Assembly: GCA_965235115.1 (NCBI GenBank) | Contig: OZ249438.1 | Location: 22,630,001-22,694,000, forward strand | Source of the DNA: Laetmonice hystrix | Taxonomy: Eukaryota | DNA length: 64,000 bases | Direction: 5' to 3' | Shown: piece by piece, positions 9,619-58,338 of the stretch | Layout: the number at the start of each line of letters is the position of its first letter | How positions within the stretch are numbered: position 1 is the first letter of the stretch | Position numbers and translations under genes: made by a program | Notes under the pieces: model-generated | What the model saw: only the letters and a program-made list of their open reading frames with translations | The model's database searches: none | What the model was told of the DNA's origin: nothing

Positions 9619-9776
9619 NNNNNNNNNNNNNNNNNNNNNNNNNNNNNNNNNNNNNNNNNNNNNNNNNNNNNNNNNNNNNNNNNNNNNNNNNNNNNNNNNN
9701 NNNNNNNNNNNNNNNNNNNNNNNNNNNNNNNNNNNNNNNNNNNNNNNNNNNNNNNNNNNNNNNNNNNNNNNNNNNN
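9619..9776. other. Assembly gap (158 N)
   Basis: Run of N in the sequence. Confidence 1.
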
Positions 9777-10805: not shown

Positions 10806-12971
10806 TGGGACCGTCACAGGGCAACCCCCACCCCCTCCCCCTCTACCTGGGACCGTCACAGGGCAACCCCCACCCCCTCCCCCTCTACCTGGGACCGTCA
10901 CAGGGCAGAACCCCCCCCCCCTCTACCTGGGACCGTCACAGGGCAGAACCCCCCCTCCCCCTCTACCTGGGACTGTCACAGGGCAGAACCCCCCCTACCT
11001 GGGACCGTCACAGGGCAGAACCCGCCCCCTCCCCCTCTACCTGGGACCGTCACAGGGCAGAACCCCCCCTCCCCCTCTACCTGAGACCGTCACAGGGCAG
11101 AACCCCCCCTCTACCTGGGACCGTCACAGGGCAACCCCCACCCCCTCCCCCTCTACCTGGGACCGTCACAGGGCAGAACCCCCCCTCTACCTGGGACCGT
11201 CACAGGGCAGAACCCCCCCTCTACCTGGGACCGTCACAGGGCAACCCCCACCCCCTCCCCCTCTACCTGGGACCGTCACAGGGCAGAACCCCCCCTCTAC
11301 CTGGGACCGTCACAGGGCAGAACCCCCCCCCTCTACCTGGGACCGTCACAGGGCAGAACCCCCCCTCTACCTGGGACCGTCACAGGGCAGAACCCCCCCC
11401 TCTACCTGGGACCGTCACAGGGCAGAACCCCCCCCCTCCCCCTCTACCTGGGACCGTCACAGGGCAGAACCCCCCCCCTCTACCTGGGACCGTCACAGGG
11501 CAGAACCCCCCCTCTACCTGGGACCGTCACAGGGCAGAACCCCCCCTCTACCTGGAACCGTCACAGGGCAGAACCCCCCCCCTCTACCTGGGACCGTCAC
11601 AGGGCAGAACCCCCCTCCCCCTCTACCTGGGACCGTCACAGGGCAGAACCCCCCCCCTCTACCTGGGACCGTCACAGGGCAGAACCCCCCCTCTACCTGG
11701 AACCGTCACAGGGCAGAACCCCCCTCCCCCTCTACCTGGAACCGTCACAGGGCAGAACCCCCCCCCCCCCCCCCCCTCTACCTGGGACCGTCACAGGGCA
11801 GAACCTCCCTCCCCCTCTACCTGGGACCGTCACAGGGCAGAACCCCCCTCCCCCTCTACCTGGGACCGTCACAGGGCAGAACCCCCCCTCTACCTGGGAC
11901 CGTCACAGGGCAGAACCCCCCCTCCCTCTACCTGGGACCGTCACAGGGCAGAACCCCCCCCCCTCTACCTGGGACCGTCACAGGGCAGAACCCCCCCCCT
12001 CTACCTGGGACCGTCACAGGGCAGAACCCCCCCCCCCCTCTACCTGGGACCGTCACAGGGCAGAACCCCCCTCCCCCTCTACCTGGGACCGTCACAGGGC
12101 AGAACCCCCCCCCCTCCCCCTCTACCTGGGACCGTCACAGGGCAGAACCCCCCTCCCCCTCTACCTGGGACCGTCACAGGGCAGAACCCCCCCTCCCCCT
12201 CTACCTGGGACCGTCACAGGGCAGAACCCCCCCTCCCCCTCTACCTGGGACCGTCACAGGGCAGACCCCCCCCCCTCTACCTGGGACCGTCACAGGGCAA
12301 AACCCCCCCTCCCCCTCTACCTGGGACCGTCACAGGGCAGAACCCCCCCTCCCCTCTACCTGGGACCGTCACAGGGCAGAACCCCCCCCCCCTCTACCTG
12401 GGACCGTCACAGGGCAGAACCCCCCCCCTCTACCTGGGACCGTCACAGGGCAGAACCCCCCCTCTGCCTGGGACCGTCACAGGGCAGAACCCCCCTCTAC
12501 CTGGGACCGTCACAGGGCAGAACCCCCCCCCCTCTACCTGGGACCGTCACAGGGCAGAACCCCCCCCCTCTACCTGGGACCGTCACAGGGCAGAACCCCC
12601 CCCCCCTACCTGGGACCGTCACAGGGCAGAACCCCCCTCTACCTGGGACTGTCACAGGGCAGAACCCCCCCCCCACCTGGGACCGTCACAGGGCAGAACC
12701 CCCCTCTACCTGGGACTGTCACAGGGCAGAACCCCCCCCCCCCCCTCTACCTGGGACCGTCACAGGGCAGAACCCCCCCCCCCTCTACCTGGGACCGTCA
12801 CAGGGCAGAACCCCCCTCTACCTGGGACTGTCACAGGGCAGAACCCCCCCTCTACCTGGGACCGTCACAGGGCAGAACCCCCCCCCCCTCTACCTGGGAC
12901 CGTCACAGGGCAGAACCCCCCCTCTACCTGGGACCGTCACAGGGCAGAACCCCCTCCCCCTCTACCTGGGA
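10806..12971. repeat. Minisatellite of about 35-45 bp with a variable poly-C tract, roughly 55 copies
   Basis: Constant core ctctacctgggaccgtcacagggcagaa followed by C-runs of variable length, sometimes interrupted by T. Confidence 0.97.
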
Positions 12972-13575: not shown

Positions 13576-14110
13576 GGTCACACGGGGCCATACAGTGCCA
13601 TACAGGGCCGCAGGAGATCACACGGGGCCACATAGGGCCATAGAGGGCCACAGGAGGTCACACGGGGCCACAGAGGGCCATAGAGGGCCGCAGGAGATCA
13701 CACGCGGCCACAGAGGGCCATAGAGGGCCACAGGAGGTCACACGGGGCCACACAGGGCCATAGAGGGCCGCAGGAGGTCACATGGGGCCACAGAGGGCCA
13801 TAGAGGGCCCCAGGAGATCACACGGGGCCACAGAGGGCCATAAAGGGCCCCAGGAGATCACACGGGGCCACAGAGGGCCATAGAGGGCCGCGGGAGATCA
13901 CACGGAGCCACAGAGGGCCATAGAGGGCCGCAGGAGATCACACGGGGCCACAGAGGGCCATAGAGGGCCGCAGGAGATCATACGGGGCCACAGAGGCCCA
14001 TAAAGGGCCCCAGGAGATCACATGGAGCCACAGAGGCCCATAAAGGGCCCCAGGAGATCACATGGAGCCACAGAGGGCCATAAAGGGCCCCAGGAGGTCT
14101 CATGGGGCCA
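13576..14110. repeat. 40-bp minisatellite, about 13 copies
   Basis: Unit cacacggggccacagagggccatagagggccgcaggagat, built from four related 10-bp sub-repeats. Confidence 0.95.
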
Positions 14111-15712: not shown

Positions 15713-17203
15713 GATCCGGGCCTCTGGTCCATGGGTCCATGTCGCCTTGACTGCGTGTATTCGGCCACTGGTCCATGGGTCCATGTCACCTTGACTAAGT
15801 GGATCCGGCCTCTGGTCCATGGGTCCATGTCACCTTGACTGAGTGGATCCGGCCTCTGGTCCATGGGTCCATGTCACCTTGACTGAGTGGATTCGGCCAC
15901 TGGTCCATGGGTCCATGGGTCCATGCCACCTTGACTGAGTGGATTCGGCCACTGACCCATGTCACCTTGACAGAGTGAATTCGGCCACTGGTCCATGGGT
16001 CCATGTCACCTTGACTGAGTGGATTCGGTCACTGGTCCATGGGTCCATGCCACCTTGACTGAGTGGATTCGGCCACTGGTCCATGGGTCCATCTCACCTT
16101 GACTGAGTGGATTCGGCCGCTGGTCCATGGGTCCATGTCACATTGACTGAGTGGATTCGGCCGCTGGTCCATGTCACGTTGACTGAGTGGATTCGGCCAC
16201 TGGTCCATGGGTCCATGTCACGTTGACTGAGTGGATTCGGCCACTGGTCCATGGGTCCATGTCACCTTGACAGAGTGGATTCGGCCATTGGTCCATGTCA
16301 CCTTGACAGAGTGGATTCGGCCGCTGGTCCATGGGTCCATGTCACCATGACTGAGTGGATTCGGCCACTGGTCCATGTCACCTTGACAGAGTGGATTCGG
16401 CCGCTGGTCCATGGGTCCATGTCACCTTGACTGAGTGGATTCGGCCACTGGTCCATGTCACCTTGACTGAGTGGATTCGGCCGCTGGTCCATGGGTCCAT
16501 GTCACCTTGACTGAGTGGATTCGGCCGCTGGTCCATGGGTCCATGTCACCTTGACTGAGTGGATTCGGCCGCTGGTCCATGGGTCCATGTCACCTTGACT
16601 GAGTGGATTCGGCCACTGGTCCATATGTCACCTTGACTGAGTAGATTCGGCCACTGGTCCATGGGTCCATGCCACTTTGACTGAGTGGATTCGGTCACTG
16701 GTCCATGGGTCCATGCCACCTTGACTGAGTGGATTCGGCCGCTGGTCCATGGGTCCATGTCACCTTGACTGAGTGGATTCGGCCACTGGTCCATGTCACC
16801 TTGACAGAGTGGATTCGGCCACTGGTCCATGGGTCCATGTCACCTTGACTGAGTGGATTCGGCCACTGTTCCATGTCACCTTGACTGAGTGGATTCGGCC
16901 ACTGGTCCATGTCACCTTGACTGAGTGGATTCGGCCACTGGTCCATGGGTCCATGTCACCTTGACAGAGTGGATTCGGCCGCTGGTCCATGGGTCCATGT
17001 CACCTTGACTGATTGGATTCGGCCGCTGGTCCATGTCACCTTGACTGAGTGGATTCGGCCACTGGTCCATGGGTCCATGTCACCTTGACAGAGTGGATTC
17101 GGCCGCTGGTCCATGGGTCCATGTCACCTTGACTGAGTGGATTCGGCCACTGGTCCATGTCACCTTGACTGAGTGGATTCGGCCGCTGGTCCATGTCACC
17201 TTG
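15713..17203. repeat. 44/35-bp minisatellite, about 36 copies
   Basis: Unit tggtccatgggtccatgtcaccttgactgagtggattcggccac. The short form lacks one copy of the 9-bp internal duplication (ggtccatg-g). Confidence 0.96.
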
Positions 17204-25088: not shown

Positions 25089-26171
25089 TCAGCCGACCTC
25101 CTGGTGAATCTGAATGTTTGCGGGTTCAGAACACCGCCATACGTGAGGTATCAGCCGACCTCCTGGTGAATCTGAATGTTTGCGGGCTCACAACACCGCC
25201 ATACGTGAGGTAGGCTATCAGCCGACCTCCTGGTGCTCACAACACCGCCATACGTGAGGTATCAGCCGACCTCCTGGTGAATCTGAATGTTTGCGGGCTC
25301 ACAACACCGCCATACGTGAGGTAGGCTATCAGCCGACCTCCTGGTGCTCACAACACCGCCATACGTGAGGTATCAGCCGACCTCCTGGTGCTCACAACAC
25401 CGCCACACGTGAGGTATCAGCCGACCTCCTGGTGCTCACAACACCGCCACACGTGAGGTATCAGCCGACCTCCTGGTGAATCTGAATGTTTGCGGGCTCA
25501 GAACACCGCCATACGTGAGGTATCAGCCGACCTCCTGGTGCTCACAACACCGCCATACGTGAGGTATCAGCCGACCTCCTGGTGAATCTGAATGTTTGCG
25601 GGCTCACAACACCGCCATACGTCAGGTATCAGCCGACCTCCTGGTGAATCTGAATGTTTGCAGGCTCACAACACCGCCATACGTCAGGTATCAGCCGACC
25701 TCCTGGTGAATCTGAATGTTTGCGGGTTCACAACACCGCCATACGTGAGGTATCAGCCGACCTCCTGGTGAATCTGAATGTTTGCGGGTTCACAACACCG
25801 CCATACGTCAGGTATCAGCCGACCTCCTGGTGCTCACAACACCGCCACACGTGAGGTATCAGCCGACCTCCTGGTGAATCTGAATGTTTGCGGGCTCACA
25901 ACACCGCCATATATACGTGAGGTATGAATCTGAATGTTTGCGTGCTCACAACACCGCCATACGAGAGGTATGAATCTGAATGGTTTCGGGCTCACAACAC
26001 CGCCATATACGTGAGGTATGAATCTGAATGTTTGCGGGCTCACAACACCGCCATACGTGAGGTATCAGCCGACCTCCTGGTGCTCACAACACCGCCACAC
26101 GTGAGGTATCAGCCGACCTCCTGGTGAATCTGAATGTTTGCGGGTTCACAACACCGCCATACGTCAGGTAT
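25089..26171. repeat. Modular 62/44/46-bp minisatellite, about 20 copies
   Basis: Long unit gtgaggtatcagccgacctcctggtgaatctgaatgtttgcgggctcacaacaccgccatac. Variants delete either aatctgaatgtttgcggg or cagccgacctcctggt. Confidence 0.95.
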
Positions 26172-29167: not shown

Positions 29168-29431
29168 GCTCCCCAGGCCAACCCGCCGCCGTGTTTCGGT
29201 ACACAGGGCCCAAGCGCAGGCTCCCCAGGCCAACCCGCCGCCGTGTTTCGGTATACAGGGCCCAGGCGCAGGCTCCCAAGGCCAACCCGCCGCCGTGTTT
29301 CGGTACACAGGGGCCAGGCGCAGACTCCCCAGGCCAACCCGCCGCCGTGTTTCGGTAGGCCTACACAGGGCCCAAGCGCAGGCTCCCCAGGCCAACCCGC
29401 CGCCGTGTTTCGGTACACAGGGGCCAGGCGC
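29168..29431. repeat. 52-bp GC-rich minisatellite, 5 copies
   Basis: Unit gctccccaggccaacccgccgccgtgtttcggtacacagggcccaagcgcag starts at 29168, 29220, 29272, 29324 and 29382. The fourth unit is 58 bp. Confidence 0.93.
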
Positions 29432-30410
29432 GGCTGTCGATGAGCGGCCTTTAGACTTCCTCTGTGTGCTCCACAATGTTACATACAAACTACCATCGCC
29501 TCCATGTGCCTGCCATATGTGATTGCATACAAGGCTGACATAATAGGTACCAGATACCAATCTATGTCAGCTACACCTCGGTCGTGACGTGACATTTGTG
29601 CCTCCAAGGACCACCTCAGGAAGGCAAAGTCTATGATATATGCTTCATTATTCATGTATATGTAACCGTTTTTACACGCTGTCGTTCGAGGTCTCTCCCC
29701 AGTAATAACACACACTGATGGGGGTTAATGTCAGGTATAACGAGTCACCGTCGCCTCAGGCCATTCTGCCGTACCTTTCCAACCAATCGGCAGGATTTTC
29801 TATGTCACCTGTGAACATGAACATAATGATATTATACGTGGTTACTCCAACCCCTAGTGCGCATAAAAGGGAAATAGATTATAACCATATCCATTACAGG
29901 TGCCTAGACGGCGCGTGTGACACATTTCTCGGTGTCAACCCTTTCACACGCGACCGACATGAAATAATCAAAATCTGAAACGTCGCATCATCGAGGGTTT
30001 CAGATACTTTACTTTGATAAAATAGTCGTCGGTTATAATTCTCAGTCGAGTGCTGTTCATTCTTCGTATTTATTAGGCTATCATGAATTCTTAGAACCGC
30101 CATTTTATCTTGGCTGTCTTCTGCCGACAGCCCCGCCCCGACAGGCGAGGGAGGAATGTAATGCAAATACACATTCAACCCCCTACCGACAGCCAATTCC
30201 CATGATTTAGTATATTTGTATAATTAATTGACGCAAAGCATCTAATTGGATTAACGTAATTTGCTGTATTAATAACGAGGATATTCCCTGGATTAAAAAT
30301 TCATACGAATTGACAAGGACAGAGCCAGCTGTCTGAGTGAGTGACGTACGCCTACTTGTACCGAGCCACTGTGTCGCTATTATTATTATGGATATGGGAT
30401 ATGCCGCTCT

Positions 30411-30801
30411 ATGGACTGGTCACAGAGAACGTGCCGCAATGGACCGGTCACACAAACTATTAACTGGTCACAGAGAGCATGCCACGGTGGACTGGTCACA
30501 GAGAGGTGCCGCTATTGACTGGTCACACAGAAAGTGTTGCTATAGACTGGTCACAGAAAGCCAGCGTGCCACTAGGGACTTGTCACAGAGAGCGTATACC
30601 GTTTTGGACTGGTCACACAGTGAGTGTTGCTATGGACTGGTCACAGAAAGCGTGCCACTATGCATGGACTTGTTCCAGAGAGCATGTGCCGTTTTGGACT
30701 GGTCACACAGAGAGTGTTGCTATGGACTGGTCACAGAAAGCGTGCCACTATGCACTTGTCACAGAGAGCGTGCCGTTTTGGACTGGTCACACAGAGCGTG
30801 C
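30411..30801. repeat. Degenerate minisatellite (core tggactggtcacagagag)
   Basis: More than 10 diverged copies of ggactggtcacag with variable spacers; the distal part shows a longer repeating block. Confidence 0.8.
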
Positions 30802-30884
30802 CCGCCGTGACGCTCGAAAACATGTCAATTCAGGACTTCCCAGCATTCATTGCTAGTCATGAGTCCGCCATGGTCCTTACTGTT

Positions 30885-32110
30885 GAACCTCTACTGTTAT
30901 ATTCCCTTCCCCTCCATTACTGTTCAACTTATACTGTTATATATCCCTTGCCCTCCCTTACTGTTCAACCTCTACTGTTATATCTCCCTTGCCCTCCCTT
31001 ACTGTTCAACCTCTACTGTTATATCTCCCTTGCCCTCCCTTACTGTTCAACCTCTACTGTTATATCTCCCTTGCCCTCCCTTACTGTTCAACCTCTAAGG
31101 TAATATCTCCCTTGTACTCCCTTACTGTTCAACCTCTACTGTTATATCTCCCTTGTACTCCTTTACTGTTCAACCTCTACTGTTATATCTCCCTTCGCTC
31201 CCTTACTGTTCAACCTCTACTGTTATATCTCCCTTCCCCTCCTTTACTGTTCAACCTCTACTGTTATATCTCCCTTCGCTCCCTTACTGTTCAACCTCTA
31301 AGGTAATATCTCCCTTGTACTCCCTTACTGTTCAACCTCTACTGTTATATCTCCCTTGTACTCCTTTACTGTTCAACCTCTACTGTTATATCTCCCTTCG
31401 CTCCCTTACTGTTCAACCTCTACTGTTATATCTCCCTTCCCCTCCTTTACTGTTCAACCTCTACTGTTATATCTCCCTTCGCTCCCTTACTGTTCAACCT
31501 CTACTGTTATATCTCCCTTGTACTCCCTTACTGTTCAACCTCTACTGTTATATCTCCCTTGTACTCCCTTACCGTTCAACCTCTACTGTTATATCTCCTT
31601 TGCCCTCCCGTACTGTTCAACCTCTACTGTTATATCTCCCTTGTACTCCCTTACTGTTTAGCCTCTACTGTTATATCTCCTTTGCCCTCCCGTACTGTTC
31701 AACCTCTACTGTTATATCTCCCTTGCCCTCCCTTACTGTTCAACCTCTACTGTTATATCTCCCTTGCCCTCCCTAACTGTTCAACCTCTACTGTTATATC
31801 TCCCTTCGCTCCCTTACTGTTCAACCTCTACTGTTATATCTCCCTTGCCCTCCGTTACTGTTTAACCTCTACTGTTATATCTCCTTTGCCCTCCCTTACT
31901 GTTCAACCTCTACTGTTATATCTCCCTTGCCCTCCGTTACTGTTTAACCTCTACTGTTATATCTCCCTTGCCCTCCCTTACTGTTCAACCTCTACTGTTA
32001 TATCTCCCTTCGCTCCCTTACTGTTCAACCTCTACATTTGTACTGTTATATCTCCCCCTTACTGTTCAACCTACTGTTATATCCCCCTTACTGTTCAACC
32101 TCTACTGTTA
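30885..32110. repeat. 41-bp pyrimidine-rich minisatellite, about 30 copies
   Basis: Unit cccttactgttcaacctctactgttatatctcccttgccct, degenerating at the right end. Confidence 0.96.
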
Positions 32111-32789
32111 TTATCTCTCTTTCCCTCTATGTCGAGTACAGTACACTTTCTTAGTAGGTTTAAACACATGCACAACTAGAGCTATTTTCAAATTGCTAAT
32201 TAATCAATTCCGTTATACGCGTGTATTCCTTTTGCCCATGATGTGCCAACATCCGCCATGCAGCCTACTTTTATATTTGTTTACTACCAGTATATGTGTA
32301 TAGTTTATTTATGTTTACTACCAGTATATTGTAGTGGTATTCTTATATACCACTGGTGGCGATCAACGTGAAGGATACAGACAGAAAACGGATGTGGGTC
32401 GATAGGAACACATATATCAGTGGACGACCAATAGGGGTGGGTGCAGCATGCAGTTTCAGTTCCAACAATACAATTGTTTTATCACGGTTTCATATCTGGT
32501 CACAAGTGTCCGCGTACAGTGTCAACCAACTGATCCATAGGCGTGGAACATACAGGCATTATACACTAGTGGTTGTTGGTGACCTATCATTATGTAATAC
32601 GAGGCAGCCTGTCATCATAAGGTTGGGAGCTCTCACATCTGGCCGGACGGTTACATGTTCGGAGCTCCTATACAATTACATACACAGTGAAACCTGATAT
32701 TAATCCTTCTCAGGTTACACTTATCTATGTTATCATTCATCTTCTCAAACATCGGGGTACACTATAGATACGGAGCTTTTGTTACTTCT

Positions 32790-33295
32790 CTGAGCGCCTT
32801 GTAACACGGCTTGGCCATGTGGAGGCGGCCAGGGTCGACCCTGTACGCCGACCGACCGCTGTCTGAGCGCCTTGTAACACGGCTTGGCCATGCAGTGTGG
32901 AGGCGGCCAGGGTCGACCCTGTACGCCGACCGACCGCTGTCTGAGCGCCTTGTAACACGGCTGTACGCCGACCGACCGCTGTCTGAGCGCCTTGTAACAC
33001 GGCTTGGCCATGCAGTGTGGAGGCGGCCAGGGTCGACCCTGTACGCCGACCGACCGCTGTCTGAGCGCCTTGTAACACGGCTTGGCCATGCAGTGTGGAG
33101 GCGGCCAGGGTCGACCCTGTACGCCGACCGACCGCTGTCTGAGCGCCTTGTAACACGGCTTGGCCATGCAGTGTGGAGGCGGCCAGGGTCGACCCTGTAC
33201 GCCGACCGACCGCTGTCTGAGCGCCTTGTAACACGGCTTGGCCATGCAGTGTGGAGGCGGCCAGGGTCGACCCTGTACGCCGACCGACCGCTGTC
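32790..33295 (-). repeat. 78-bp minisatellite (7 units) resembling a degenerate tRNA-Leu on the minus strand
   Basis: Units start at 32790 (73 bp), 32863, 32941 (42 bp), 32983, 33061, 33139 and 33217. Minus strand reads ATGGCCAAGCCGTGTTACAAGGCGCTCAGACAGCGGTCGGTCGGCGTACAGGGTCGACCCTG. The repeat is certain; the tRNA origin is an inference. Confidence 0.9.
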
Positions 33296-34307
33296 GAGGT
33301 GCATGTCGACGAGACACGAGTCAGTCTATCTGGCCAGTTAACACGGCCGTCCCTGAGCTTGGAGTCATCATCCATGCTCACCTGGGTCGCATTAGTCACA
33401 TATTTTGTCACTCCATCTTCTTAATTAATAAACGATTGAACGCCAGAGCGCGTCAATTGTCTTGAAGGCGATATAAATGCGCCCCGTCCTCCTCCCTTGC
33501 TGCATGACTGAGGTAGCCCCCATATAAACGGTCGGCGCTCTCTGATCGTACCAGAAGCCATGTTGACGTTTTTTTTTATAACCACCGGGCCTTGCCCAGG
33601 GTTGGCTTGTTAAAGGTGACAGTAGATACAAGGCGTTCACGTCGACTTGTCAACCACAAACCACGGCTGGCTCGGCCGGCACAGAATGAAGCAAGCCCTG
33701 GCGACATGATTTCAAACACCTTTTAAAACACTGGCAGACGTTCTAGGGTTTAGGATCGATAAGAGTGGGTGATAAAGATGAGACAGCGAAGATTGTGGGT
33801 GAAGGGGGAGAGGTGTGTAAGGTAGTGGGAGGATGGGGGACAGGGAGGACCCGTTCACAGTCGGACTGGTCGCGACAATGTCTGTCACCTTGGTTTGACA
33901 GAGCTAGTCGTGATAAACAATCCACCAGGCTCGACGCTTTGTCCAACACCATTTCAGCTCTCCGTTTGCACAATTCACCATTTTTTCCCACTAAAGTAGA
34001 ACGATTATTGTACTTCTGAAGTGATCTGGAAATATGTGCTATTTTGCATTTCCCTTCGAATATAATGTATACGCCAGAGACCAATTTCTACCCTCGCTGA
34101 CCCATGCACATAAATGTACTATACAGCTTGTATCTCAGGGGAAGACTGCTATGTAAATATAGAATGAAAAACAAAAATTAACACCAATGCCATTTCCAAG
34201 AGACACCCCGTTAAACACTCACCTTGATAATCGGTATACATGCATAAATTGACCTGCAACAATGAAACCGATGAATTTGACCTTCACATCAACCGATCAA
34301 CACTCGA

Positions 34308-34987
34308 TGATTTGTGTGCACCCTCGGTGATACACGTATCCCCTTATAATAATACTATACACGGTGCACATGATCTGCGTGCACCCTCGGTGACACACGT
34401 ATCCCCTTATAATAATACTATAACAAGGTACACATGATCTGTGTGCACCCTCAGTGATACACGTATCCCCTTATAATAATACTATACACGGTGCACATGA
34501 TGTGTGCACCCTCGTTGATACACGTATCCCCTTATAATAATACTATAACAAGGTACACATGATCTGTGTGCACCCTCAGTGATACACGTATCCCCTTATA
34601 ATAATACTATAACAAGGTTCACATGATCTGTGTGCACCCTCAGTGATACACGTATCCCCTTATAATAATACTATACACGGTGCACATGATGTGTGCACCC
34701 TCGTTGATACACGTATCCCCTTATAATAATACTATAACAAGGTACACATGATCTGTGTGCACCCTCAGTGATACACGTATCCCCTTATAATAATACTATA
34801 ACAAGGTACACATGATCTGTGTGCACCCTCAGTGATACACGTATCCCCTTATAATAATACTATACACGGTGCACGTGATGTGTGCACCCTCGTTGATACA
34901 CGTATCCCCTTATAATAATACTATAACAAGGTACACATGGTCTGTGTGCACCCTCGGTGATACACGTATCCCCTTATAATAATACTA
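34308..34987. repeat. 61-64-bp minisatellite, about 11 copies, with a trimeric higher-order pattern
   Basis: Unit gatctgtgtgcaccctcagtgatacacgtatccccttataataatactataacaaggtacacat. Two end variants occur in the order B A B A A B A A B A. Confidence 0.95.
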
Positions 34988-37118: not shown

Positions 37119-37356
37119 ATTAACTGTTGGCCTGCATGGCAGTAAGAGTCCAGAGATTGCATTAACTGTTGGCCTGCATGGCAGTAAGAGTCCAGAGGTT
37201 GCATTAACTGTTGGCCTGCATGGCAGTAAGAGTCCAGAGATTGCATTAACTGTTGGCCTGCATGGCAGTAAGAGTCCAGAGGTTGCATTAACTGTTGGCC
37301 TGCATGGCAGTAAGAGTCCAGAGATTGCATTAACTGTTGGCCTGCATGGCAGTAAG
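37119..37356. repeat. 42-bp minisatellite, about 5.7 copies
   Basis: Unit attaactgttggcctgcatggcagtaagagtccagag(a/g)ttgc, with the A/G variant strictly alternating. Confidence 0.95.
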
Positions 37357-38376
37357 GGTCGAGGATCTGTGTGAGAGTTGATGTAGATTAACCTGCCGAT
37401 CAAGGAAGTCTGTCATTTACAATGACGTCCATACACCCCATGAAAACCTTTCCAGCAAGGTACAGATGTGGCCACAGGTGTTGGTAGATGATTATTACCA
37501 TCATCGTTTTCTTCATCAATGTGATGACTGAGTTGAGGATGATGATACGGTCACTGTGTTGGACTGCCTTCATCTCAATAATCATTAAGTCCTCTAGCCG
37601 CTGGTATACGTGTGGTGCGGGAATAAAAGAAAATAAAAGAAAGAAAATGGGGACAAAGTCATAATATACAGTGGCAATGCGTCATTCGGCAGTCGCTGTA
37701 ATGTCTACAGCACGGTCATAACAATTATACATAAATAAGAAACAATGTTTTGTTTGTCTTTCTTTGTTGTTCTTGTTTTCAGGCTTTGCCATCGAGCGCA
37801 AACATAACTCGTGTAAGTTATATTGTTGGTGGTGGTATTGGTGGTGGTGGCGAGTGTCCACTGCAGGTCCACATTCTTCAAATCGCACATCAGATAAGCA
37901 CACCCAACTGCTGTTAGATGTTAGCAGGCCGAGTGAAACCCAACTTTTGGACAGTTCAAGCCTTGCAGAATTTGCTGCATGGCTGGTGACGGGCATGACG
38001 GTGGATGCCTGACTTGGTGCCCGGGGTCGGGGGACAGTACGGGCGGCAGGCGGACACAGCGAGACCAGTAGGCCTGTCACTGATTGCCATCCAACCATCG
38101 ATCAAGCCACCGTCCAAATCAGCCCTCATGCATTGATTGCAGCGATACAAGTCCTTAACGCTTGCATTACAACTGCGCCCCTCCATCGTTAAGATGACCC
38201 CCGAGAATGCGTGTTTATAAGTTACAGAGAAACCGGGTAGTTTCTTCTGGTGTCAACTGGTGGTGGTTGAGGGGGTGGGGGCGAGGGCTGGGACTGATGG
38301 GACTGATCGACTGCCTGACTGACTGGCGTATATATTATTATATATAAGTGAAGATGTGCGCCGATGGCTGAGACTA

Positions 38377-38722
38377 TCACAAGCTCTGGTAGTCGGCAAG
38401 CATTCCGCCGACATCGTTGTTGTTGACGTTGGTGTGGCCGGGCGGGCCGCCTCCCCCGCCGTGCGCCGAGAGTAGCCCGGGCATCAGATTGTTCGTCGGC
38501 AGAGAGGACGGCTTCTGCAGTTCAGTGAACATGCCCTGCGAGTGAGGCGGTGTATCGGGTAGTTTGGGTGTGGTCACTCCGGTTTGACCGTTAATTTCCA
38601 TGTCGAGATCCATATCGGGTGAATCGGGTGGTTCCTGTTTGGTGGTTTCCCCGTCCAGTGAGCCCCCGCCCCCGCCGCCACTGCTGTCATTAGCCGTCTG
38701 CTGTTGTGAGCCCGTGTTGTCG
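38377..38722 (-). CDS. Six1/2: Six1/2 (sine oculis) exon 2, low-complexity C-terminal region ending GGMLADYQSL*
   Basis: Minus-strand acceptor ttacgttttcacttgcag|C ends at 38723. Phase 2 matches the exon 1 donor (GA|C = Asp). 346 nt of open frame to TGA at 38379-38377; Gly/Pro/Ser-rich, as is usual for a transcription-factor tail. Confidence 0.85.
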
Positions 38723-39767
38723 CTGCAAGTGAAAACGTAATGGTCATCATTATAGTCAGTATGTGGTCCACATATATACATCTGAGCCGGACCTCACACC
38801 CGGCCATGTTACGTCGACAAACAGCTCAATTATCGTGTATTTTACCTTTAGTTAGAACACATGACAATTACACGTGTATCTATATACGATACATAGTAAT
38901 AACATGTTATAGGCGCCACTTTGACTTCAGAATGGTTACCTGTACATAGCCTGAATAGTCTGTACAGCTGTTTCACGAACGTACGGCCTATAGCTCATAG
39001 CCACCTTCTTATCAAAATCTACCAAATATAAATACCATCAATAAGTGAAGACAAGAACCATTATGACATATTGGCCGTAGATATAGGATGCATGTGTATA
39101 AACTTATAAGCCTATATTCAATCATGCACATACTATTAAGTACGGGTATAATAATTCCATTAAAATAACCTGCAAATCGATTTGAGACTAACAAAATGAC
39201 CCTTATTATATATTATATGGTGCATGAATAAGCTGAATGTAGCAGAAATATTCACGATATGTCAACTTATGCTGCAATAACGTAACCGTCAAGGTCTAAC
39301 CCGATGTCCATATATCATTCGCTGTGTGATGGGATATAGGCCTACAATTTCCAGGACTATACTAGTGTAGACGTATGATATCAAGGTACTTTCCATACTG
39401 TAATCACGCTCAGAGAATAACGACCGAAAGCACACGCTCCACATCCAGAATGGAGGCCGAGGATGAAAATGCTAGTGCCGTTACGAAGGCGGATCAAGTT
39501 ACATGGACGCTAGACGGCCGCTTTCGCTAGCCTCTCCCTCGTGATGTTGTTACTGGGCCGGCCGCCGGGGTGGGGTGAGTCGGGGCGGGCGGTGGACCGG
39601 GCACAGGCAGACACACACACCGATCAATAGACGTTCTACCCTCTCTCTCTCTATCCTGATGACTAGAGCTCAGTACGACCACGACGTCAACACCTTGTCT
39701 ATATCCACTCAACTCCAATATTAATACAAATACATCTGACCCAGATTACGACACGATGTGATTGCCA

Positions 39768-39821
39768 GCTCTGTGTGTCCGACCGGTTCTGTGTGTCCGA
39801 CCGGCTCTGTGTGTCCGACCG
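39768..39821. repeat. 18-bp tandem repeat, 3 copies
   Basis: g(c/t)tctgtgtgtccgaccg three times. Confidence 0.9.
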
Positions 39822-40004
39822 GGGGGCACGTATTGACGACATTAGGATAGGTTAACATCGACGTCAACACAACACTTCTAAAAATCACAATCTACAGGAT
39901 GGATGACGCGTGTCGTACTAGTCTTCTAAAACTGCGGAATTCTATCAATATCCTTGCTGAAGTGTTCCCTGTCCGATATTTTACCTTAGCTGTGCCAGTG
40001 TCGG

Positions 40005-40170
40005 CAACCTAGGCCTATAGGATGAGATCTTAATCACACAACCTAGGCCTATAGGATGAAATCTTAATCACACAACCTAGGCCTATAGGATGAAATCTTA
40101 ATCACACAACCTAGGCCTATAGGATGAAATCTTAATCACACAACCTAGGCCTATAGGATGAAATCTTAAT
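40005..40170. repeat. 34-bp minisatellite, 5 copies, left flank of the 334-bp array
   Basis: caacctaggcctataggatga(g/a)atcttaatcaca at 40005, 40039, 40073, 40107 and 40141. One further copy lies at 43473-43509. Confidence 0.95.
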
Positions 40171-43100
40171 GTTCGGTAGAAATCATGTGTAGCTCTAACT
40201 AGGAAAATATGGATTCCGTCTCATTTAAAAAAGATGTGTGTAGGGGGGAGGGTCCATTGTCCTGCTCGACCACCAAAGCTCCTTTTTTAGGGGAGTGGCG
40301 GTGGCCTAGTGGGCATGGATGTCGACACCTTATGCTATGCGAATGGGTGCAGTAATCTTAGGGCCTGGGTTCGATTCCTGTAGAGGACTATACAACTTTT
40401 CTCTTTAGGGACATTGTCAAAGTAATTGGGTTACCCCTGATGCCCGTGCATTTCAAAAGAAAAATACAGTCTACGCCAGTGCCAGGATTACCTTAACAGT
40501 CAATGTTCGGTAGAAATCATGTGTAGCTCTAACTAGGAAAATATGGATTCCGTCTCATTTAAAAAAGATGTGTGTAGGGGGGAGGGTCCATTGTCCTGCT
40601 CGACCACCAAAGCTCCTTTTTTAGGGGAGTGGCGGTGGCCTAGTGGGCATGGATGTCGACACCTTATGCTATGCGAATGGGTGCAGTAATCTTAGGGCCT
40701 GGGTTCGATTCCTGTAGAGGACTATACAACTTTTCTCTTTAGGGACATTGTCAAAGTAATTGGGTTACCCCTGATGCCCGTGCATTTCAAAAGAAAAATA
40801 CAGTCTACGCCAGTGCCAGGATTACCTTAACAGTCAATGTTCGGTAGAAATCATGTGTAGCTCTAACTAGGAAAATATGGATTCCGTCTCATTTAAAAAA
40901 GATGTGTGTAGGGGGGAGGGTCCATTGTCCTGCTCGACCACCAAAGCTCCTTTTTTAGGGGAGTGGCGGTGGCCTAGTGGGCATGGATGTCGACACCTTA
41001 TGCTATGCGAATGGGTGCAGTAATCTTAGGGCCTGGGTTCGATTCCTGTAGAGGACTATACAACTTTTCTCTTTAGGGACATTGTCAAAGTAATTGGGTT
41101 ACCCCTGATGCCCGTGCATTTCAAAAGAAAAATACAGTCTACGCCAGTGCCAGGATTACCTTAACAGTCAATGTTCGGTAGAAATCATGTGTAGCTCTAA
41201 CTAGGAAAATATGGATTCCGTCTCATTTAAAAAAGATGTGTGTAGGGGGGAGGGTCCATTGTCCTGCTCGACCACCAAAGCTCCTTTTTTAGGGGAGTGG
41301 CGGTGGCCTAGTGGGCATGGATGTCGACACCTTATGCTATGCGAATGGGTGCAGTAATCTTAGGGCCTGGGTTCGATTCCTGTAGAGGACTATACAACTT
41401 TTCTCTTTAGGGACATTGTCAAAGTAATTGGGTTACCCCTGATGCCCGTGCATTTCAAAAGAAAAATACAGTCTACGCCAGTGCCAGGATTACCTTAACA
41501 GTCAATGTTCGGTAGAAATCATGTGTAGCTCTAACTAGGAAAATATGGATTCCGTCTCATTTAAAAAAGATGTGTGTAGGGGGGAGGGTCCATTGTCCTG
41601 CTCGACCACCAAAGCTCCTTTTTTAGGGGAGTGGCGGTGGCCTAGTGGGCATGGATGTCGACACCTTATGCTATGCGAATGGGTGCAGTAATCTTAGGGC
41701 CTGGGTTCGATTCCTGTAGAGGACTATACAACTTTTCTCTTTAGGGACATTGTCAAAGTAATTGGGTTACCCCTGATGCCCGTGCATTTCAAAAGAAAAA
41801 TACAGTCTACGCCAGTGCCAGGATTACCTTAACAGTCAATGTTCGGTAGAAATCATGTGTAGCTCTAACTAGGAAAATATGGATTCCGTCTCATTTAAAA
41901 AAGATGTGTGTAGGGGGGAGGGTCCATTGTCCTGCTCGACCACCAAAGCTCCTTTTTTAGGGGAGTGGCGGTGGCCTAGTGGGCATGGATGTCGACACCT
42001 TATGCTATGCGAATGGGTGCAGTAATCTTAGGGCCTGGGTTCGATTCCTGTAGAGGACTATACAACTTTTCTCTTTAGGGACATTGTCAAAGTAATTGGG
42101 TTACCCCTGATGCCCGTGCATTTCAAAAGAAAAATACAGTCTACGCCAGTGCCAGGATTACCTTAACAGTCAATGTTCGGTAGAAATCATGTGTAGCTCT
42201 AACTAGGAAAATATGGATTCCGTCTCATTTAAAAAAGATGTGTGTAGGGGGGAGGGTCCATTGTCCTGCTCGACCACCAAAGCTCCTTTTTTAGGGGAGT
42301 GGCGGTGGCCTAGTGGGCATGGATGTCGACACCTTATGCTATGCGAATGGGTGCAGTAATCTTAGGGCCTGGGTTCGATTCCTGTAGAGGACTATACAAC
42401 TTTTCTCTTTAGGGACATTGTCAAAGTAATTGGGTTACCCCTGATGCCCGTGCATTTCAAAAGAAAAATACAGTCTACGCCAGTGCCAGGATTACCTTAA
42501 CAGTCAATGTTCGGTAGAAATCATGTGTAGCTCTAACTAGGAAAATATGGATTCCGTCTCATTTAAAAAAGATGTGTGTAGGGGGGAGGGTCCATTGTCC
42601 TGCTCGACCACCAAAGCTCCTTTTTTAGGGGAGTGGCGGTGGCCTAGTGGGCATGGATGTCGACACCTTATGCTATGCGAATGGGTGCAGTAATCTTAGG
42701 GCCTGGGTTCGATTCCTGTAGAGGACTATACAACTTTTCTCTTTAGGGACATTGTCAAAGTAATTGGGTTACCCCTGATGCCCGTGCATTTCAAAAGAAA
42801 AATACAGTCTACGCCAGTGCCAGGATTACCTTAACAGTCAATGTTCGGTAGAAATCATGTGTAGCTCTAACTAGGAAAATATGGATTCCGTCTCATTTAA
42901 AAAAGATGTGTGTAGGGGGGAGGGTCCATTGTCCTGCTCGACCACCAAAGCTCCTTTTTTAGGGGAGTGGCGGTGGCCTAGTGGGCATGGATGTCGACAC
43001 CTTATGCTATGCGAATGGGTGCAGTAATCTTAGGGCCTGGGTTCGATTCCTGTAGAGGACTATACAACTTTTCTCTTTAGGGACATTGTCAAAGTAATTG

Positions 43101-43473
43101 GGTTACCCCTGATGCCCGTGCATTTCAAAAGAAAAATACAGTCTACGCCAGTGCCAGGATTACCTTAACAGTCAATGTTCGGTAGAAATCATGTGTAGCT
43201 CTAACTAGGAAAATATGGATTCCGTCTCATTTAAAAAAGATGTGTGTAGGGGGGAGGGTCCATTGTCCTGCTCGACCACCAAAGCTCCTTTTTTAGGGGA
43301 GTGGCGGTGGCCTAGTGGGCATGGATGTCGACACCTTATGCTATGCGAATGGGTGCAGTAATCTTAGGGCCTGGGTTCGATTCCTGTAGAGGACTATACA
43401 ACTTTTCTCTTTAGGGACATTGTCAAAGTAATTGGGTTACCCCTGATGCCCGTGCATTTCAAAAGAAAAATAC
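40168..43473 (+). repeat. 334-bp tandem array (9.9 apparently identical units) containing a tRNA-derived/SINE-like head
   Basis: caatgttcggtag recurs at 40501, 40835, 41169, 41503, 41837, 42171, 42505, 42839 and 43173, an exact 334-bp period. I found no differences between units by eye. Confidence 0.97.
40295..40400 (+). ncRNA. tRNA-like Pol III module, first of 10 copies (others start at 40629, 40963, 41297, 41631, 41965, 42299, 42633, 42967, 43301)
   Basis: A box TGGCCTAGTGG (40302-40312), B box GGTTCGATTCC (40368-40378), TTTT at 40397-40400, and T6 just upstream. The acceptor stem does not pair, so it is SINE-head-like rather than a true tRNA. Transcription is not shown. Confidence 0.55.
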
Positions 43474-43509
43474 AACCTAGGCCTATAGGATGAGATCTTA
43501 ATCACACAA
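43473..43509. repeat. Single copy of the 34-bp unit, right flank of the 334-bp array
   Basis: caacctaggcctataggatgagatcttaatcacacaa, identical to the first left-flank copy (G variant). Confidence 0.93.
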
Positions 43510-44039
43510 GGAACATGATGCTTTGCAGCGGGTTAATAATGGCGCTACAATTACCAATAGTAATTTTCCGGTCGTACACAAGGATGAGATTATTCTGGGT
43601 GTGCATGCACTGTGTGTATATGGGGGGGGGCAGAGTGGAGGCCTATCATAATACCTAGGCTGTAAGTGCAAATAAAAGTACTGCCGCTAAAACTTTTCTT
43701 TCACATGAAATTCTCTCAAATGTTACCATCATATGCCTAATTTGGAGATTGGCAAATTGAATTATACTAAAAATGATTTTTAATTTGGTGATTTAAATTT
43801 TTCTCAATCTATCTACTGGTAATGAAGAAGAAAGAGAAACTCGGCGGTAATGATGACTGATGTCTGAGTGTTTGTGCGCAGTCTTGTGAACACAATGTGT
43901 GGTAAGTTTTCACTCTGATCATGTTTACTGTGCTACATTAGTCACATTGTTATCAATGTTGATATAACGTAAACGGTGTCTCATCGGGGCGAACACTGAC
44001 TCGTCATTACCCTGGCTACGTGTGAAATGGAATGGGTGA

Positions 44040-44177
44040 GGGGGGCGAGGAGGAGGGGAGGAGGGGAGGAGGAGGAAGGGAGGAGGGGAGGGGAGGAGGG
44101 GAGGAGGAGGACAAGGAGGGGAGGAGGAGGGGAGGAGGACAAGGAGGGGAGGAGGACGGGGACGAGGAGGAGGGGAG
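44040..44177. repeat. Purine-rich (GGA/GGGGA)n low-complexity tract
   Basis: About 140 bp made almost entirely of G and A. Confidence 0.85.
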
Positions 44178-44336
44178 AGTACCAGCATTTTGATCACTGA
44201 CAAGAATCAAGCCCGCGTCAGTAATGTATTGCTTGAAGGCGAAGGTCATTTCATTGATCACACTTGAATTAATTCGCCCATCGTCTGGCGGCATTTGGCT
44301 TTTACTCCCTCAGGGACTAATCACCACTAATCTCAA

Positions 44337-44410
44337 GGAATCGAACCATTCCTGCGTCACTCCACCCCCGTGGTGCCAAGCGTCGACCACAAGATAAACC
44401 TGGCTGCCAA
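44337..44410 (-). mobile_element. Possible degenerate tRNA-derived SINE head
   Basis: Minus strand has a perfect B box GGTTCGATTCC (44347-44337), preceded by GTCGAC and GGGTGGAGT blocks resembling the 334-bp unit. The A box is not recognisable. Confidence 0.3.
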
Positions 44411-46210
44411 ACCTGCCCCCGACCCTAACCCCCTGCACCACTCAGATCAAAGACTGGGACATGATCATCGAGTTGTCATTCTCGGTAATAACAGCGTCCC
44501 GACATGGAGCATAATACAATTACAATTACATCTTCATTAGATCTTAACTCTGCCGCTGACCCATGGGGTTGGGCTTGTCGCTGGAGGACCCCATCACGAC
44601 AACCACCTCATTCATGGAGCAATGATTCGGCACACATTTATCTAAACGCCTGATCGGACGTCGTCCTGTCTAGTAATCAGCGGGACTGCGGTGATCGGGA
44701 CTGGTTTGGGCTGACACAGATTTGTCACCGATAAAACGACTCATATAACCGTGGTCAGGTCGTCCCCCCAGCCCCACCCTCCCTACTCATTATCTCATCA
44801 AGGGGCTAATGTGATTTCCACTGAGATGCTAACATTTAGGCGGGTTTCCAGACAGGAAGCTTATTAAACGATGATCTTTAGTCGAATCCATGTATTGTTC
44901 ATTTAGGCGTTGGGTTTCCGGCGGACGGTGCACGCGAGCGGGGTGCGTGCTGCGCGGGCCGGCGGCGTGCGTGTACCGACCGCCGCCGGCCACCGACCGC
45001 CACAGCCTCATTTGTTGCCGGGGTCGGGATCACGGCAGCCACGACGCAGGCTTATTAGCAAATACAGAGAAATGACGTGGGGATATAATTACAAAAAGAC
45101 GCCGGCTATTGTTAATTGTAATGATTTTGTAATAATCCACCCGCGCCCTTTGCGAGTCTGGTTGTAGCCCGTAATGATTTGATTAGGAAAAACAAGCACG
45201 TTTGAGGGTCGGTGTGAGGCCGGGCCGAGCCTGATGGAGCGTGGCTGGGTGACGGCAGGGAGGGCTCGGGATGCGGCGGGATGCCAGCGGCAGCGGGCCG
45301 GGCCGGGCGGCCACCCTCACCCCGGCCTGCTGCCAGCACTCTCTCCGGTATACGGGCAGGTACCGGGCGGACTGCCTGGCTGGCTGCCCCGCTTTCTGCC
45401 TCTTGGCTTGGGCCTTGGCACACGTGCTACCCCCCAAGTCAATTCGCCTGAACCAGATGCATATTTAAACACTTTCTGACCCACATATAGGATGCTGTTT
45501 GTTAGTATACAAATACAAGCAGTCTGATATAGATCGGGCGACACCAGTCGTTTACTGTATACGTAGAGTTTATAATGTATAGATAGTGACAGTCAGCGGC
45601 AATAATTCACCATGTCAGGTGTGTCGGATTCACGAGAGGGTGGTCCGTATAGAGCTGTATAGAGAACACTGCCGCCTGCAGCTTGTGATCATGGCCTGCT
45701 TGACGTGGAGAAGACCAGGTTAAAACAATGTCACCCTGACACAGACAACAACAGTGATTATTGGAGGAGGTGCTCGCCGACAGCAGCTGAATCATTCACT
45801 CTGCTCTACGTACACATCCTCCCTCTGCCCATCTCGCTCTCCAAACCTACCTTCGTGTTTGCTTACAATATTTGATCAAAATTCGGTACACGCTGGGGGG
45901 CGACTTGACACACATTTACCGTATCAACAGCGCGGCGGCTGGCTAAAGCTAAGCTGACGTATTGCCAGCACCTTAGAACACCGTTCTGCACAGGTAGTCT
46001 ATTAATAATTCCTGTCATGTGAATCACGCTTGGCTAACAAGAGCTATTATCACCCTCCCGTACACCCCCCCCCCACACACACACACACTTTTTACCCTGG
46101 CATCCATAGGACAGTTGTCTCTTTGCCCTCACGACTCTGCCATACGATGCATGATTTCTAAGATTTTCTCAGGTATTAGGAAGTAAATGAAATAAATGAC
46201 ATTGTACTTA

Positions 46211-46978
<768 letters not shown>

Positions 46979-58014: not shown

Positions 58015-58338
58015 NNNNNNNNNNNNNNNNNNNNNNNNNNNNNNNNNNNNNNNNNNNNNNNNNNNNNNNNNNNNNNNNNNNNNNNNNNNNNNNNNNNNNN
58101 NNNNNNNNNNNNNNNNNNNNNNNNNNNNNNNNNNNNNNNNNNNNNNNNNNNNNNNNNNNNNNNNNNNNNNNNNNNNNNNNNNNNNNNNNNNNNNNNNNNN
58201 NNNNNNNNNNNNNNNNNNNNNNNNNNNNNNNNNNNNNNNNNNNNNNNNNNNNNNNNNNNNNNNNNNNNNNNNNNNNNNNNNNNNNNNNNNNNNNNNNNNN
58301 NNNNNNNNNNNNNNNNNNNNNNNNNNNNNNNNNNNNNN
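58015..58338. other. Assembly gap (324 N)
   Basis: Run of N in the sequence. Confidence 1.

What the first reader, a model, noticed from the sequence alone, without database searches (positions are those of the whole stretch)
40168..43473. Ten identical tRNA-like Pol III cassettes in tandem inside the Six1/2 intron, antisense to the gene
Seen: each 334-bp unit has a T6 run, then a consensus A box and B box 55 nt apart (longer than in an intron-less tRNA), then a T4 terminator. This predicts a self-contained RNA of about 105 nt from each of 10 copies. The units look identical and the array makes up about 44% of the intron. Established: A+B boxes recruit TFIIIC/Pol III; Pol III-type satellites (Xenopus satellite I/OAX, schistosome Sm-alpha) and tDNA insulators are precedents. 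Inference: a very young or homogenised SINE-derived satellite that could produce an intron-antisense small RNA, cause Pol II/Pol III collisions, or insulate within a key sensory and muscle developmental gene. Perfect identity could also reflect assembly consensus.
Basis: partly seen in the sequence, partly recalled or inferred. Interest (0 to 1): 0.8.

Follow-up and report, generated by a model that had tools for sequence, protein, structure and literature searches.

The report
Young mobile tRNA-box repeat insertion
The ten perfect 334-bp repeats in the Six1/2 intron are real, but they are one very recent insertion of a genome-wide mobile element that copies itself in as head-to-tail strings, not a device specific to this gene.

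Summary
Window 40168-43474 carries 9.9 copies of a 334-bp unit with no mismatch. Each unit has T6, a perfect A box, a perfect B box 55 nt later, then T4. The array lies antisense in the single 7,489-bp Six1/2 intron and fills 44% of it.

The locus is not special. The same unit, often 100% identical, forms short arrays on most chromosomes (at least 284 matches, and 1,834 candidate regions with an older subfamily).

In 72 arrays I could read:
- 59 of 68 end at the same unit position (301-310, '...AAAAATACAGTC').
- 5' starts fall anywhere in the unit.
- Several arrays carry one private substitution in every monomer.
- One insertion in unique DNA has a perfect 107-bp target-site duplication.
- About half sit in minisatellites whose units begin ACAG.

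My reading is a non-autonomous retroelement inserted by target-primed reverse transcription from a single unit-length template. It resembles a retrozyme or schistosome Sm-alpha, but no ribozyme and no tRNA fold were detectable.

A Penelope-like partner fits the hallmarks, but I could not show it. Transcription, Pol III use and any effect on Six1/2 are untested.

This scan already met the same family on another piece of this genome (s1-319919) and read it likewise.

The parts
40168..43474 (+). Array of 9.9 identical 334-bp units (nine full copies plus a last copy of 301 nt). It is one insertion of the dispersed family and ends at the family's fixed 3' position.
40283..40288 (+). T6 run of the first unit (unit positions 116-121). 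It recurs every 334 bp.
40302..40312 (+). A box TGGCCTAGTGG of the first unit (unit positions 135-145).
   Evidence: intact in 12/15 copies below 95% identity
40368..40378 (+). B box GGTTCGATTCC of the first unit (unit positions 201-211).
40397..40400 (+). T4 run of the first unit (unit positions 230-233).
40466..40471 (+). ACAGTC motif at unit positions 299-304. This is where arrays of the family end, and I infer it is the priming site for reverse transcription.
40472..40501 (+). 30-nt linker (unit positions 305-334, ending in a second ACAGTC). It is present between monomers and absent after the last one.
40005..40170 (+). 34-bp repeat x4.9 on the left of the array. The first copy has the variant GATGAGATC; the inner copies have GATGAAATC.
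43473..43506 (+). Single 34-bp copy on the right of the array, with the same GATGAGATC variant as the outermost left copy. It is either a candidate 34-bp target-site duplication or the edge of a pre-existing minisatellite.
46212..46963 (-). Six1/2 exon 1 (SIX1_SD plus homeodomain). The upstream limit is that of the open frame, not a mapped start.
38723..46211 (-). The single Six1/2 intron, GT..AG, 7,489 bp.
38377..38722 (-). Six1/2 exon 2 coding part, through the stop codon.

Best explanation
The array is a single, very recent insertion of a dispersed, non-coding retroelement whose unit is 334 bp.

Shown by the data:
- The family makes short arrays all over the genome.
- The arrays share one 3' end and are cut short at random on the 5' side.
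- They are born homogeneous.
- They can be flanked by a long target-site duplication.
- They land preferentially in minisatellites whose units start with ACAG.

Inferred mechanism:
- A nicked target end pairs with the ACAG(UC) motif at unit positions 299-304 of a unit-length RNA.
- A reverse transcriptase copies that single template round and round. The template could be a circle, or the enzyme could re-enter the same molecule.
- The enzyme falls off somewhere, and the 5' end is joined by microhomology.
- The tRNA-type A and B boxes probably give each unit its own Pol III promoter, as in a SINE.

The enzyme donor is most likely a Penelope-like element, at about 0.55 given a retro mechanism. 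In the Six1/2 intron the insertion is antisense and is most likely a tolerated passenger.
For: Dispersal and youth:
- At least 284 matches, with dozens of arrays at 100% identity.
- 1,834 candidate regions with an older subfamily as query.
- Summed contig depth over the unit is about 1.2-1.8 million, against 33 on the unique flank. This is rough.

Ends:
- 59 of 68 readable 3' ends fall at unit positions 301-310.
- 5' starts are spread from 1 to 305.
- Array lengths run from 0.4 to 10.6 units.

Homogeneous at birth, meaning a private substitution present in every monomer:
- 119T>A in 10/10 (L048).
- 120T>A in 5/5 (L049).
- 162C>T in 6/6 (L037).
- Also L031, L035, L040 and L050, two monomers each.

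Staggered-cut insertion:
- A perfect 107-bp duplication flanks the L035 array exactly and occurs only twice in that locus.
- Other insertions show no duplication and have short microhomologies.

Target:
- 29 of 59 arrays are followed by an ACAG...TAATCAC-type minisatellite unit.
- The same junctions recur genome-wide in contigs (table 5c).

Promoter:
- The boxes stay intact in older subfamilies.

Penelope-like hallmarks described in the literature (PMC8557442, PMC3846280):
- 5' truncation.
- Head-to-tail multicopy insertions of non-autonomous elements.
- A 30-40-bp 'tail'.
- A bias for microsatellite targets.
- Clades without a hammerhead.
- Target-site duplications from none to 8-10 bp, with microhomology at the 5' junction.

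Penelope-like elements in this genome:
- 124 GIY-YIG hits, mostly 759-aa open frames in tandem at about 5,581-bp spacing.
- One hit (C18:8003672-8003941, +) lies 1.1 kb upstream of an array on the same strand.
Against: - The partner is therefore unproven.
- Only one of 124 GIY-YIG hits lies next to a listed array.
- A T4 sits between the promoter and the 3' end, and a T6 sits in front of every promoter. These would stop Pol III before a multi-unit or even a full 3' end-bearing transcript, unless T4 is leaky.
- No RNA evidence exists.
- No ribozyme, circle or significant fold was found to explain a unit-length or circular template.
- Homogeneous arrays could in principle come from copying already homogeneous source arrays.
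Confidence: 0.7

Rival explanations
1. It is a retroposed concatemer, as above, but mobilised by a LINE rather than a Penelope-like element. That would make it a tRNA-derived SINE that happens to concatemerise.
For: A fixed 3' end, 5' truncation, variable and sometimes long target-site duplications, and microhomology at 5' junctions are also LINE/SINE traits (PMC9977147). The genome holds thousands of RT candidates (4,702).
Against: Precise multi-unit head-to-tail insertions with a roughly 30-nt linker are described for Penelope-like and retrozyme elements, not for LINE-driven SINEs. The unit has no poly(A) or short-repeat tail.
Confidence: 0.18
2. It is a DNA-level rolling-circle element (Helitron, Replitron or a Rep-type replicon). 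The fixed end would be the nick site and the variable end would be where replication stopped.
For: Rolling-circle copying naturally gives identical tandem units from one template. It also gives one fixed and one variable end.
Against: There are no Helitron termini and no hairpin near the fixed end. A perfect 107-bp target-site duplication argues against it. The minisatellite targets show ACAG microhomology, and no Rep was tied to the family.
Confidence: 0.06
3. It is an ordinary satellite seeded by a SINE, grown and homogenised in place, and spread by segmental duplication or extrachromosomal circles.
For: It is a tandem arrangement with perfect local identity.
Against: Different chromosomes carry arrays of different lengths in unrelated flanks. 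59 of 68 arrays share the same 3' end. A target-site duplication is present. Circle reinsertion would give random ends on both sides.
Confidence: 0.03
4. It is a locus-specific functional array: ten Pol III genes for a roughly 105-nt RNA, or a TFIIIC insulator selected within Six1/2.
For: The A and B boxes are perfect and are flanked by T runs.
Against: The identical unit occurs at many unrelated loci. There are zero substitutions in 3.3 kb, so there has been no time for selection at this locus. The putative RNA has no fold above background. No RNA data exist.
Confidence: 0.03

Closest known systems
Schistosome Sm-alpha / Sj-alpha SINE-like retroposons
   Same: The unit is about 335 bp, tRNA-derived with Pol III-type boxes, present in more than 10,000 copies, and found both in tandem arrays and dispersed (PMC2770079, PMC8490949).
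   Different: Sm-alpha carries an active type I hammerhead ribozyme. Here there is no CUGANGA core on either strand and no Rfam ribozyme match at E<=1. tRNA finders classify Sm-alpha copies as tRNA-Gln-like, whereas this unit is not recognised as a tRNA at all.
Metazoan non-LTR retrozymes
   Same: They are small (about 170-400 bp) units in short dispersed tandem arrays. They are thought to spread through unit-length circular RNA and are linked to Penelope-like elements (PMC7229834; preprint 10.64898/2026.07.22.740005).
   Different: The defining hammerhead is absent. This unit has an internal Pol III-type promoter. The preprint reports that vertebrate retrozymes are excluded from introns, whereas this copy is intronic.
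Non-autonomous Penelope-like elements such as MRC1 / Chlamys-N families
   Same: They show 5' truncation, multicopy head-to-tail insertions, no canonical hammerhead in that clade, targeting of simple repeats, and recent activity.
   Different: Those elements share their 3' ends with an identified autonomous partner. Here the partner is not identified. Their targets are mono- or dinucleotide repeats, not ACAG-type minisatellites. No tRNA-type promoter is described for them.
tRNA-derived SINEs
   Same: They have an internal A and B box promoter, are short and non-coding, are dispersed in high copy, and are 5' truncated with a fixed 3' end.
   Different: SINEs insert as single units with an A-rich or short-repeat tail, and they avoid internal T4 or longer runs. 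This family inserts as strings of up to 10 or more units and keeps a T6 and a T4 in every unit.

Membership tests
tRNA gene / tRNA-like RNA | Cloverleaf fold recognisable by tRNA models | tested here: not met
   ARAGORN finds 0 genes. There is no Rfam tRNA match at E<=1. The fold z-score is +0.89.
tRNA-derived SINE | Internal Pol III A and B boxes | tested here: met
   Both consensus boxes are perfect and are kept in older subfamilies. This is sequence evidence only; promoter activity was not tested.
tRNA-derived SINE | Single-unit insertions with a 3' tail shared with a LINE partner | tested here: inconclusive
   Insertions run from 0.4 to 10.6 units.
Non-LTR retrozyme | Hammerhead (or other self-cleaving) ribozyme in every unit | tested here: not met
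   An Rfam scan of the array on both strands at E<=1 finds nothing. A dimer has no CUGANGA core on either strand.
Non-LTR retrozyme | Short dispersed tandem arrays of a 170-400-bp unit | tested here: met
Non-LTR retrozyme | Unit-length circular RNA | not testable with these tools
   No RNA run holds the unit. Only contigs were available.
Non-autonomous Penelope-like element | 5' truncation, head-to-tail copies, roughly 30-40-bp tail, simple-repeat target | tested here: met
   There is a 30-nt linker at unit positions 305-334. This is compared with the description in PMC8557442.
Non-autonomous Penelope-like element | 3' end shared with an RT plus GIY-YIG element of the same genome | not tested
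   GIY-YIG open frames are abundant and tandem, but their DNA could not be fetched. Only one adjacency was seen, on C18.
Helitron | 5'-TC...CTRR-3' ends, a 3' hairpin, insertion at AT without a target-site duplication | tested here: not met
   The fixed end is ...ATACAGTC, with no hairpin seen at that end in the sequence. A 107-bp target-site duplication is present.

The most novel reading that the evidence does not exclude
This would be a retrozyme-like element that has replaced the self-cleaving ribozyme by a tRNA-type module. Each unit would be its own Pol III gene bounded by T runs. A unit-length, possibly circularised, transcript made without any ribozyme would serve as a single template for rolling-circle reverse transcription, by an enzyme related to telomerase. 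The same reiterative copying may also generate the ACAG-type minisatellites that flank the arrays. In the window, for example, the inner 34-bp copies all share one variant and the two outer copies share another.
Probability: 0.2. Interest if true: 0.75.

Novelty: new variant of a known kind. Interest (0 to 1): 0.45.

Why it matters
For Six1/2 it matters little. The array is a fresh, probably neutral, antisense intronic insertion. On the gene's sense strand the unit offers no poly(A) signal and no strong splice site.

The family itself is of interest for mobile-element biology. It is currently active and very abundant. It combines a SINE-type promoter with retrozyme-type concatemer insertion, yet shows no ribozyme.

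Because so many copies are identical and the insertions leave clean junctions, the family is a good natural system for two questions. One is how concatemers are made during reverse transcription. The other is whether minisatellites can be a by-product of that process.

It is also a practical warning for annotation. Perfect tandem arrays with Pol III boxes in developmental genes of this genome are transposon insertions, not gene-specific devices.

Tried and rejected
- Known RNA families: an Rfam scan at E<=1 over 39500-44500 found nothing. ARAGORN found nothing.
- Hammerhead by hand: the only near-match is CUGAUGC...GAAA...GUC at unit positions 270-304. It lacks A9 and both helices, and it is expected by chance.
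- Structure: the putative 113-nt RNA and the whole unit fold no better than shuffles.
- Purifying selection on the boxes: the family is too young for a test (1.5% mean divergence). The A box is not less variable than average.
- Partner hunt in held DNA: no RT or GIY-YIG was found among ten of the longest open frames (180 aa or more) of the 20 large loci, or in the window's long open frames.
- Partner hunt by coordinates: I searched for the terminal 12-mer while excluding unit copies. This found one other repeat sharing about 24 nt (ATTTCAA..AAAAATACAGT). That sequence continues conserved past the motif in about 45 of 50 copies. None of the 50 lies next to a listed GIY-YIG or RT hit. It is not shown to be a partner.
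- A second unit query with an older subfamily gave no further array/GIY-YIG adjacency.
- The JGI metagenome scan for the unit's 3' end found 0 matches.
- Expression: no run on record as RNA holds the unit. Run X6, of unknown kind, has unit contigs and none on the intron flank, with uneven depth. Contig depth cannot be read as expression, so I claim nothing from it.
- Copy number by spanning reads could not be tested, because only contigs were available.
- Ferbeyre et al. 1998 is not held, so Sm-alpha is cited through later papers.
Full report
WHAT IS THERE

TRF reports one array at 40168-43474 with period 334, 9.9 copies and 100% matches. A base-by-base comparison gives no mismatch among the nine full copies. 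The periodicity starts at 40168 and stops at 43474.

Every unit has four features:
- a T6 run at unit positions 116-121;
- an A box TGGCCTAGTGG at 135-145;
- a B box GGTTCGATTCC at 201-211;
- a T4 run at 230-233.
Both boxes match the textbook consensus at every specified position, and they lie 55 nt apart.

The array sits in the only intron of a Six1/2-type gene on the minus strand. Exon 1 carries SIX1_SD and a homeodomain. The intron runs from the donor GT at 46211 to the acceptor AG at 38723, which is 7,489 bp. The array is 44% of it, and its boxes are antisense to the gene.

'tRNA-like' needs a limit. ARAGORN finds no tRNA in the window. Rfam finds nothing at E<=1 on either strand of the array. 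The predicted 113-nt RNA folds no better than shuffled sequence, with z=+0.89. Only the promoter boxes are tRNA-like.

THE LOCUS IS NOT SPECIAL

The same 334-bp unit gives at least 284 matches in the window's own genome. They lie in short arrays on most chromosomes, and more than 100 monomers are 100% identical to the window's unit. An older subfamily used as query raises 1,834 candidate regions.

In contigs of a whole-genome run of the same organism, the summed depth over the unit is about 1.2-1.8 million, against 33 on the unique intron flank. This is a rough figure, but it points to thousands or tens of thousands of monomers.

A marine metagenome of 2016 and a run labelled as another organism each hold the unit as a 364-nt cyclic contig with 1-3 differences. 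The unit and its tandem state therefore do not depend on this assembly.

Other arrays in the assembly show single-base differences in one monomer out of nine. Perfect identity here is thus not consensus smoothing.

ANATOMY OF THE FAMILY

I fetched 50 loci and parsed 72 arrays. Four regularities stand out.

1. Of 68 arrays with a readable 3' end, 59 stop at unit positions 301-310, inside '...AAAAATACAGTC'. The 5' starts are spread over the whole unit, from 1 to 305. Lengths run from 0.4 to 10.6 units. The window's array, at 9.9 units, is among the longest and ends at position 301.

2. Arrays are homogeneous in a telling way. A substitution absent from the common variant is present in every monomer of an array:
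- 119T>A in 10 of 10 monomers (L048);
- 120T>A in 5 of 5 (L049);
- 162C>T in 6 of 6 (L037);
- further cases with two monomers each in L031, L035, L040 and L050.
Each array was therefore made from one monomer-sized template, not copied from a mosaic array.

3. In unique DNA the L035 array is flanked by a perfect 107-bp direct duplication. The duplication abuts both junctions and occurs only twice in the locus, so it is a target-site duplication. Five other insertions in unique DNA show none, and they have junctions with a few shared bases.

4. About half of the arrays lie inside minisatellites whose units begin ACAG and often end TAATCAC (29 of 59 downstream flanks). The 3' junction falls on the shared ACAG. 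The same 'position 304, then a 27-28-nt minisatellite unit, then a 5'-truncated unit' joints recur genome-wide in the contigs (table 5c).

The window follows this pattern. A 34-bp repeat (ACAACC...TAATCAC) lies on both sides of the array. The outermost left copy and the single right copy share one variant, and the 3.9 inner left copies share another. This is either a 34-bp target-site duplication around newly made repeats, or a pre-existing minisatellite. I cannot tell which.

MECHANISM

Four features together are the signature of target-primed reverse transcription: a fixed 3' end, random 5' truncation, target-site duplications of variable length (0 to 107 bp), and microhomology at junctions.

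Concatemers that are homogeneous at birth add the need for a single reusable template. That could be a circular RNA, or re-entry of the enzyme on the same molecule. These steps are inferred, not shown.

The 30-nt segment 305-334 is present between monomers, is missing after the last one, and itself ends in ACAGTC. It resembles the 30-40-bp 'tail' described for Penelope-like elements. That group also shows 5' truncation, partial tandems, a bias for simple-repeat targets and clades without hammerheads. Its non-autonomous derivatives insert as multicopy head-to-tail strings (PMC8557442, PMC3846280, PMC9977147).

The genome holds 124 GIY-YIG hits. Most are 759-aa open frames repeated at about 5,581 bp, as expected of Penelope-like tandems. 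One hit lies 1.1 kb upstream of an array on the same strand. From the numbers of hits and arrays I estimate about 0.04 such pairs by chance.

The partner therefore remains an inference. A LINE partner is the main rival.

An earlier follow-up in this scan (s1-319919) read the same family on another piece of the genome as a ribozyme-free, Penelope-dependent concatemer element that homes to TACAG minisatellites. My independent census agrees on everything except the partner, which I could not test.

THE POL III BOXES

The boxes stay intact in copies below 95% identity, 12 of 15 for each box. The masters of older subfamilies therefore kept them, which suggests they serve propagation, as in a SINE.

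Four of 54 5' starts fall at positions 121-125, about 10-14 nt upstream of the A box, where a Pol III start would lie. I expect about 0.8 there by chance. This is a hint only.

Against a simple Pol III model, the T4 lies between the promoter and the 3' end, and the T6 in front of each promoter would end any transcript after one unit. A unit-length transcript running from about position 122 to the next T6 is the most that Pol III could make. That length fits the single-monomer template, but it has not been observed.

No run on record as RNA holds the unit.

CONSEQUENCE FOR SIX1/2

The insertion has no substitution in 3.3 kb and is identical to the commonest variant of the family. It is therefore too young to be a conserved feature of the gene.

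On the gene's sense strand the unit has no AATAAA or ATTAAA, no GTRAGT and no polypyrimidine-AG. On the other strand it would offer two acceptor-like sites per unit. The antisense orientation is thus the harmless one.

Collision, insulation and small-RNA effects remain possible. They are not supported by anything I could compute.

COMPARISON AND NOVELTY

The closest described element is schistosome Sm-alpha. It is a roughly 335-bp tRNA-derived SINE-like unit found both in tandem and dispersed, but it carries an active hammerhead.

Metazoan non-LTR retrozymes share the array architecture and the proposed circular-RNA route. Their defining ribozyme is absent here.

Non-autonomous Penelope-like elements such as MRC1 share ribozyme-free head-to-tail insertion. 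No tRNA-type promoter is described for them.

I therefore class the family as a new variant of a known kind. The finding as given is an ordinary, though unusually clean, transposon insertion.

Noticed in passing
window 1-1759, 10830-12971, 13578-14110, 15719-17195, 25089-26109, 29168-29435, 30409-32089, 32789-33295, 34307-34987, 37119-37360: The window is crowded with minisatellites of 28-124-bp units. The one at 10830-12971 (about 34-37 bp x57, G+C-rich) creates a spurious 770-aa open frame with no Pfam match. The one at 32961-33295 is 78 bp x4.3 at 100% identity. Several units contain TCACAG or TCACAA, like the targets of the 334-bp family.
   Followed up: partly
window 44300-44360: About 840 bp right of the array, in the same intron, a B-box match (GGTTCGATTCC) lies on the minus strand next to GGGACTAATCAC, a motif like the end of the common target minisatellite unit. 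It may be a relic of an older related insertion.
   Followed up: no
window 18199 (+), 20183 (-): Two further isolated B-box matches (GGTTCGAGGCC) occur without an A box. They may be remnants of other tRNA-derived repeats.
   Followed up: no
window 44038-44177: A purine-rich GAG/GGA low-complexity tract lies inside the Six1/2 intron.
   Followed up: no
G000:C21:23120155-23170389, C7:18340570-18374328, C10:9850518-9867530 and others: GIY-YIG hits in 759-aa open frames recur at about 5,581-bp spacing, which looks like Penelope-like elements in tandem. A second set with 789-aa frames lies at contig ends (C2:22011, C6:5237, C15:38002, C17:28026, C21:23535194-23561744). That placement suggests chromosome-end association.
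   Followed up: partly
50 sites, e.g. G000:C1:63784322, C8:14264078, C30:10640305: A separate dispersed repeat shares ATTTCAAGCAACAAAAATACAGT with the unit's 3' end. As in the unit, a roughly 30-nt stretch follows, ending in a second ACAGT. It then continues conserved. It is not adjacent to any listed RT or GIY-YIG hit.
   Followed up: partly
L033:1330-1870, L041:1700-2240, L031:2320-3090: The ACAG-type minisatellites that host the arrays also host small elements with terminal inverted repeats. In L031 they contain an inverted duplication of a whole array-plus-minisatellite block.
   Followed up: no
L013, L016, L035, L048, L049 (unit positions 119-122): Independent variants cluster in the T6 run (119T>A, 120T>A, 120-122 TT>AAA, 121 deletion). 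It is the most variable stretch of the unit (5.4% non-consensus against a mean of 1.5%).
   Followed up: partly
window 9619-9776, 58015-58338: Two runs of N (158 and 324 bases). They were left as they are.
   Followed up: no
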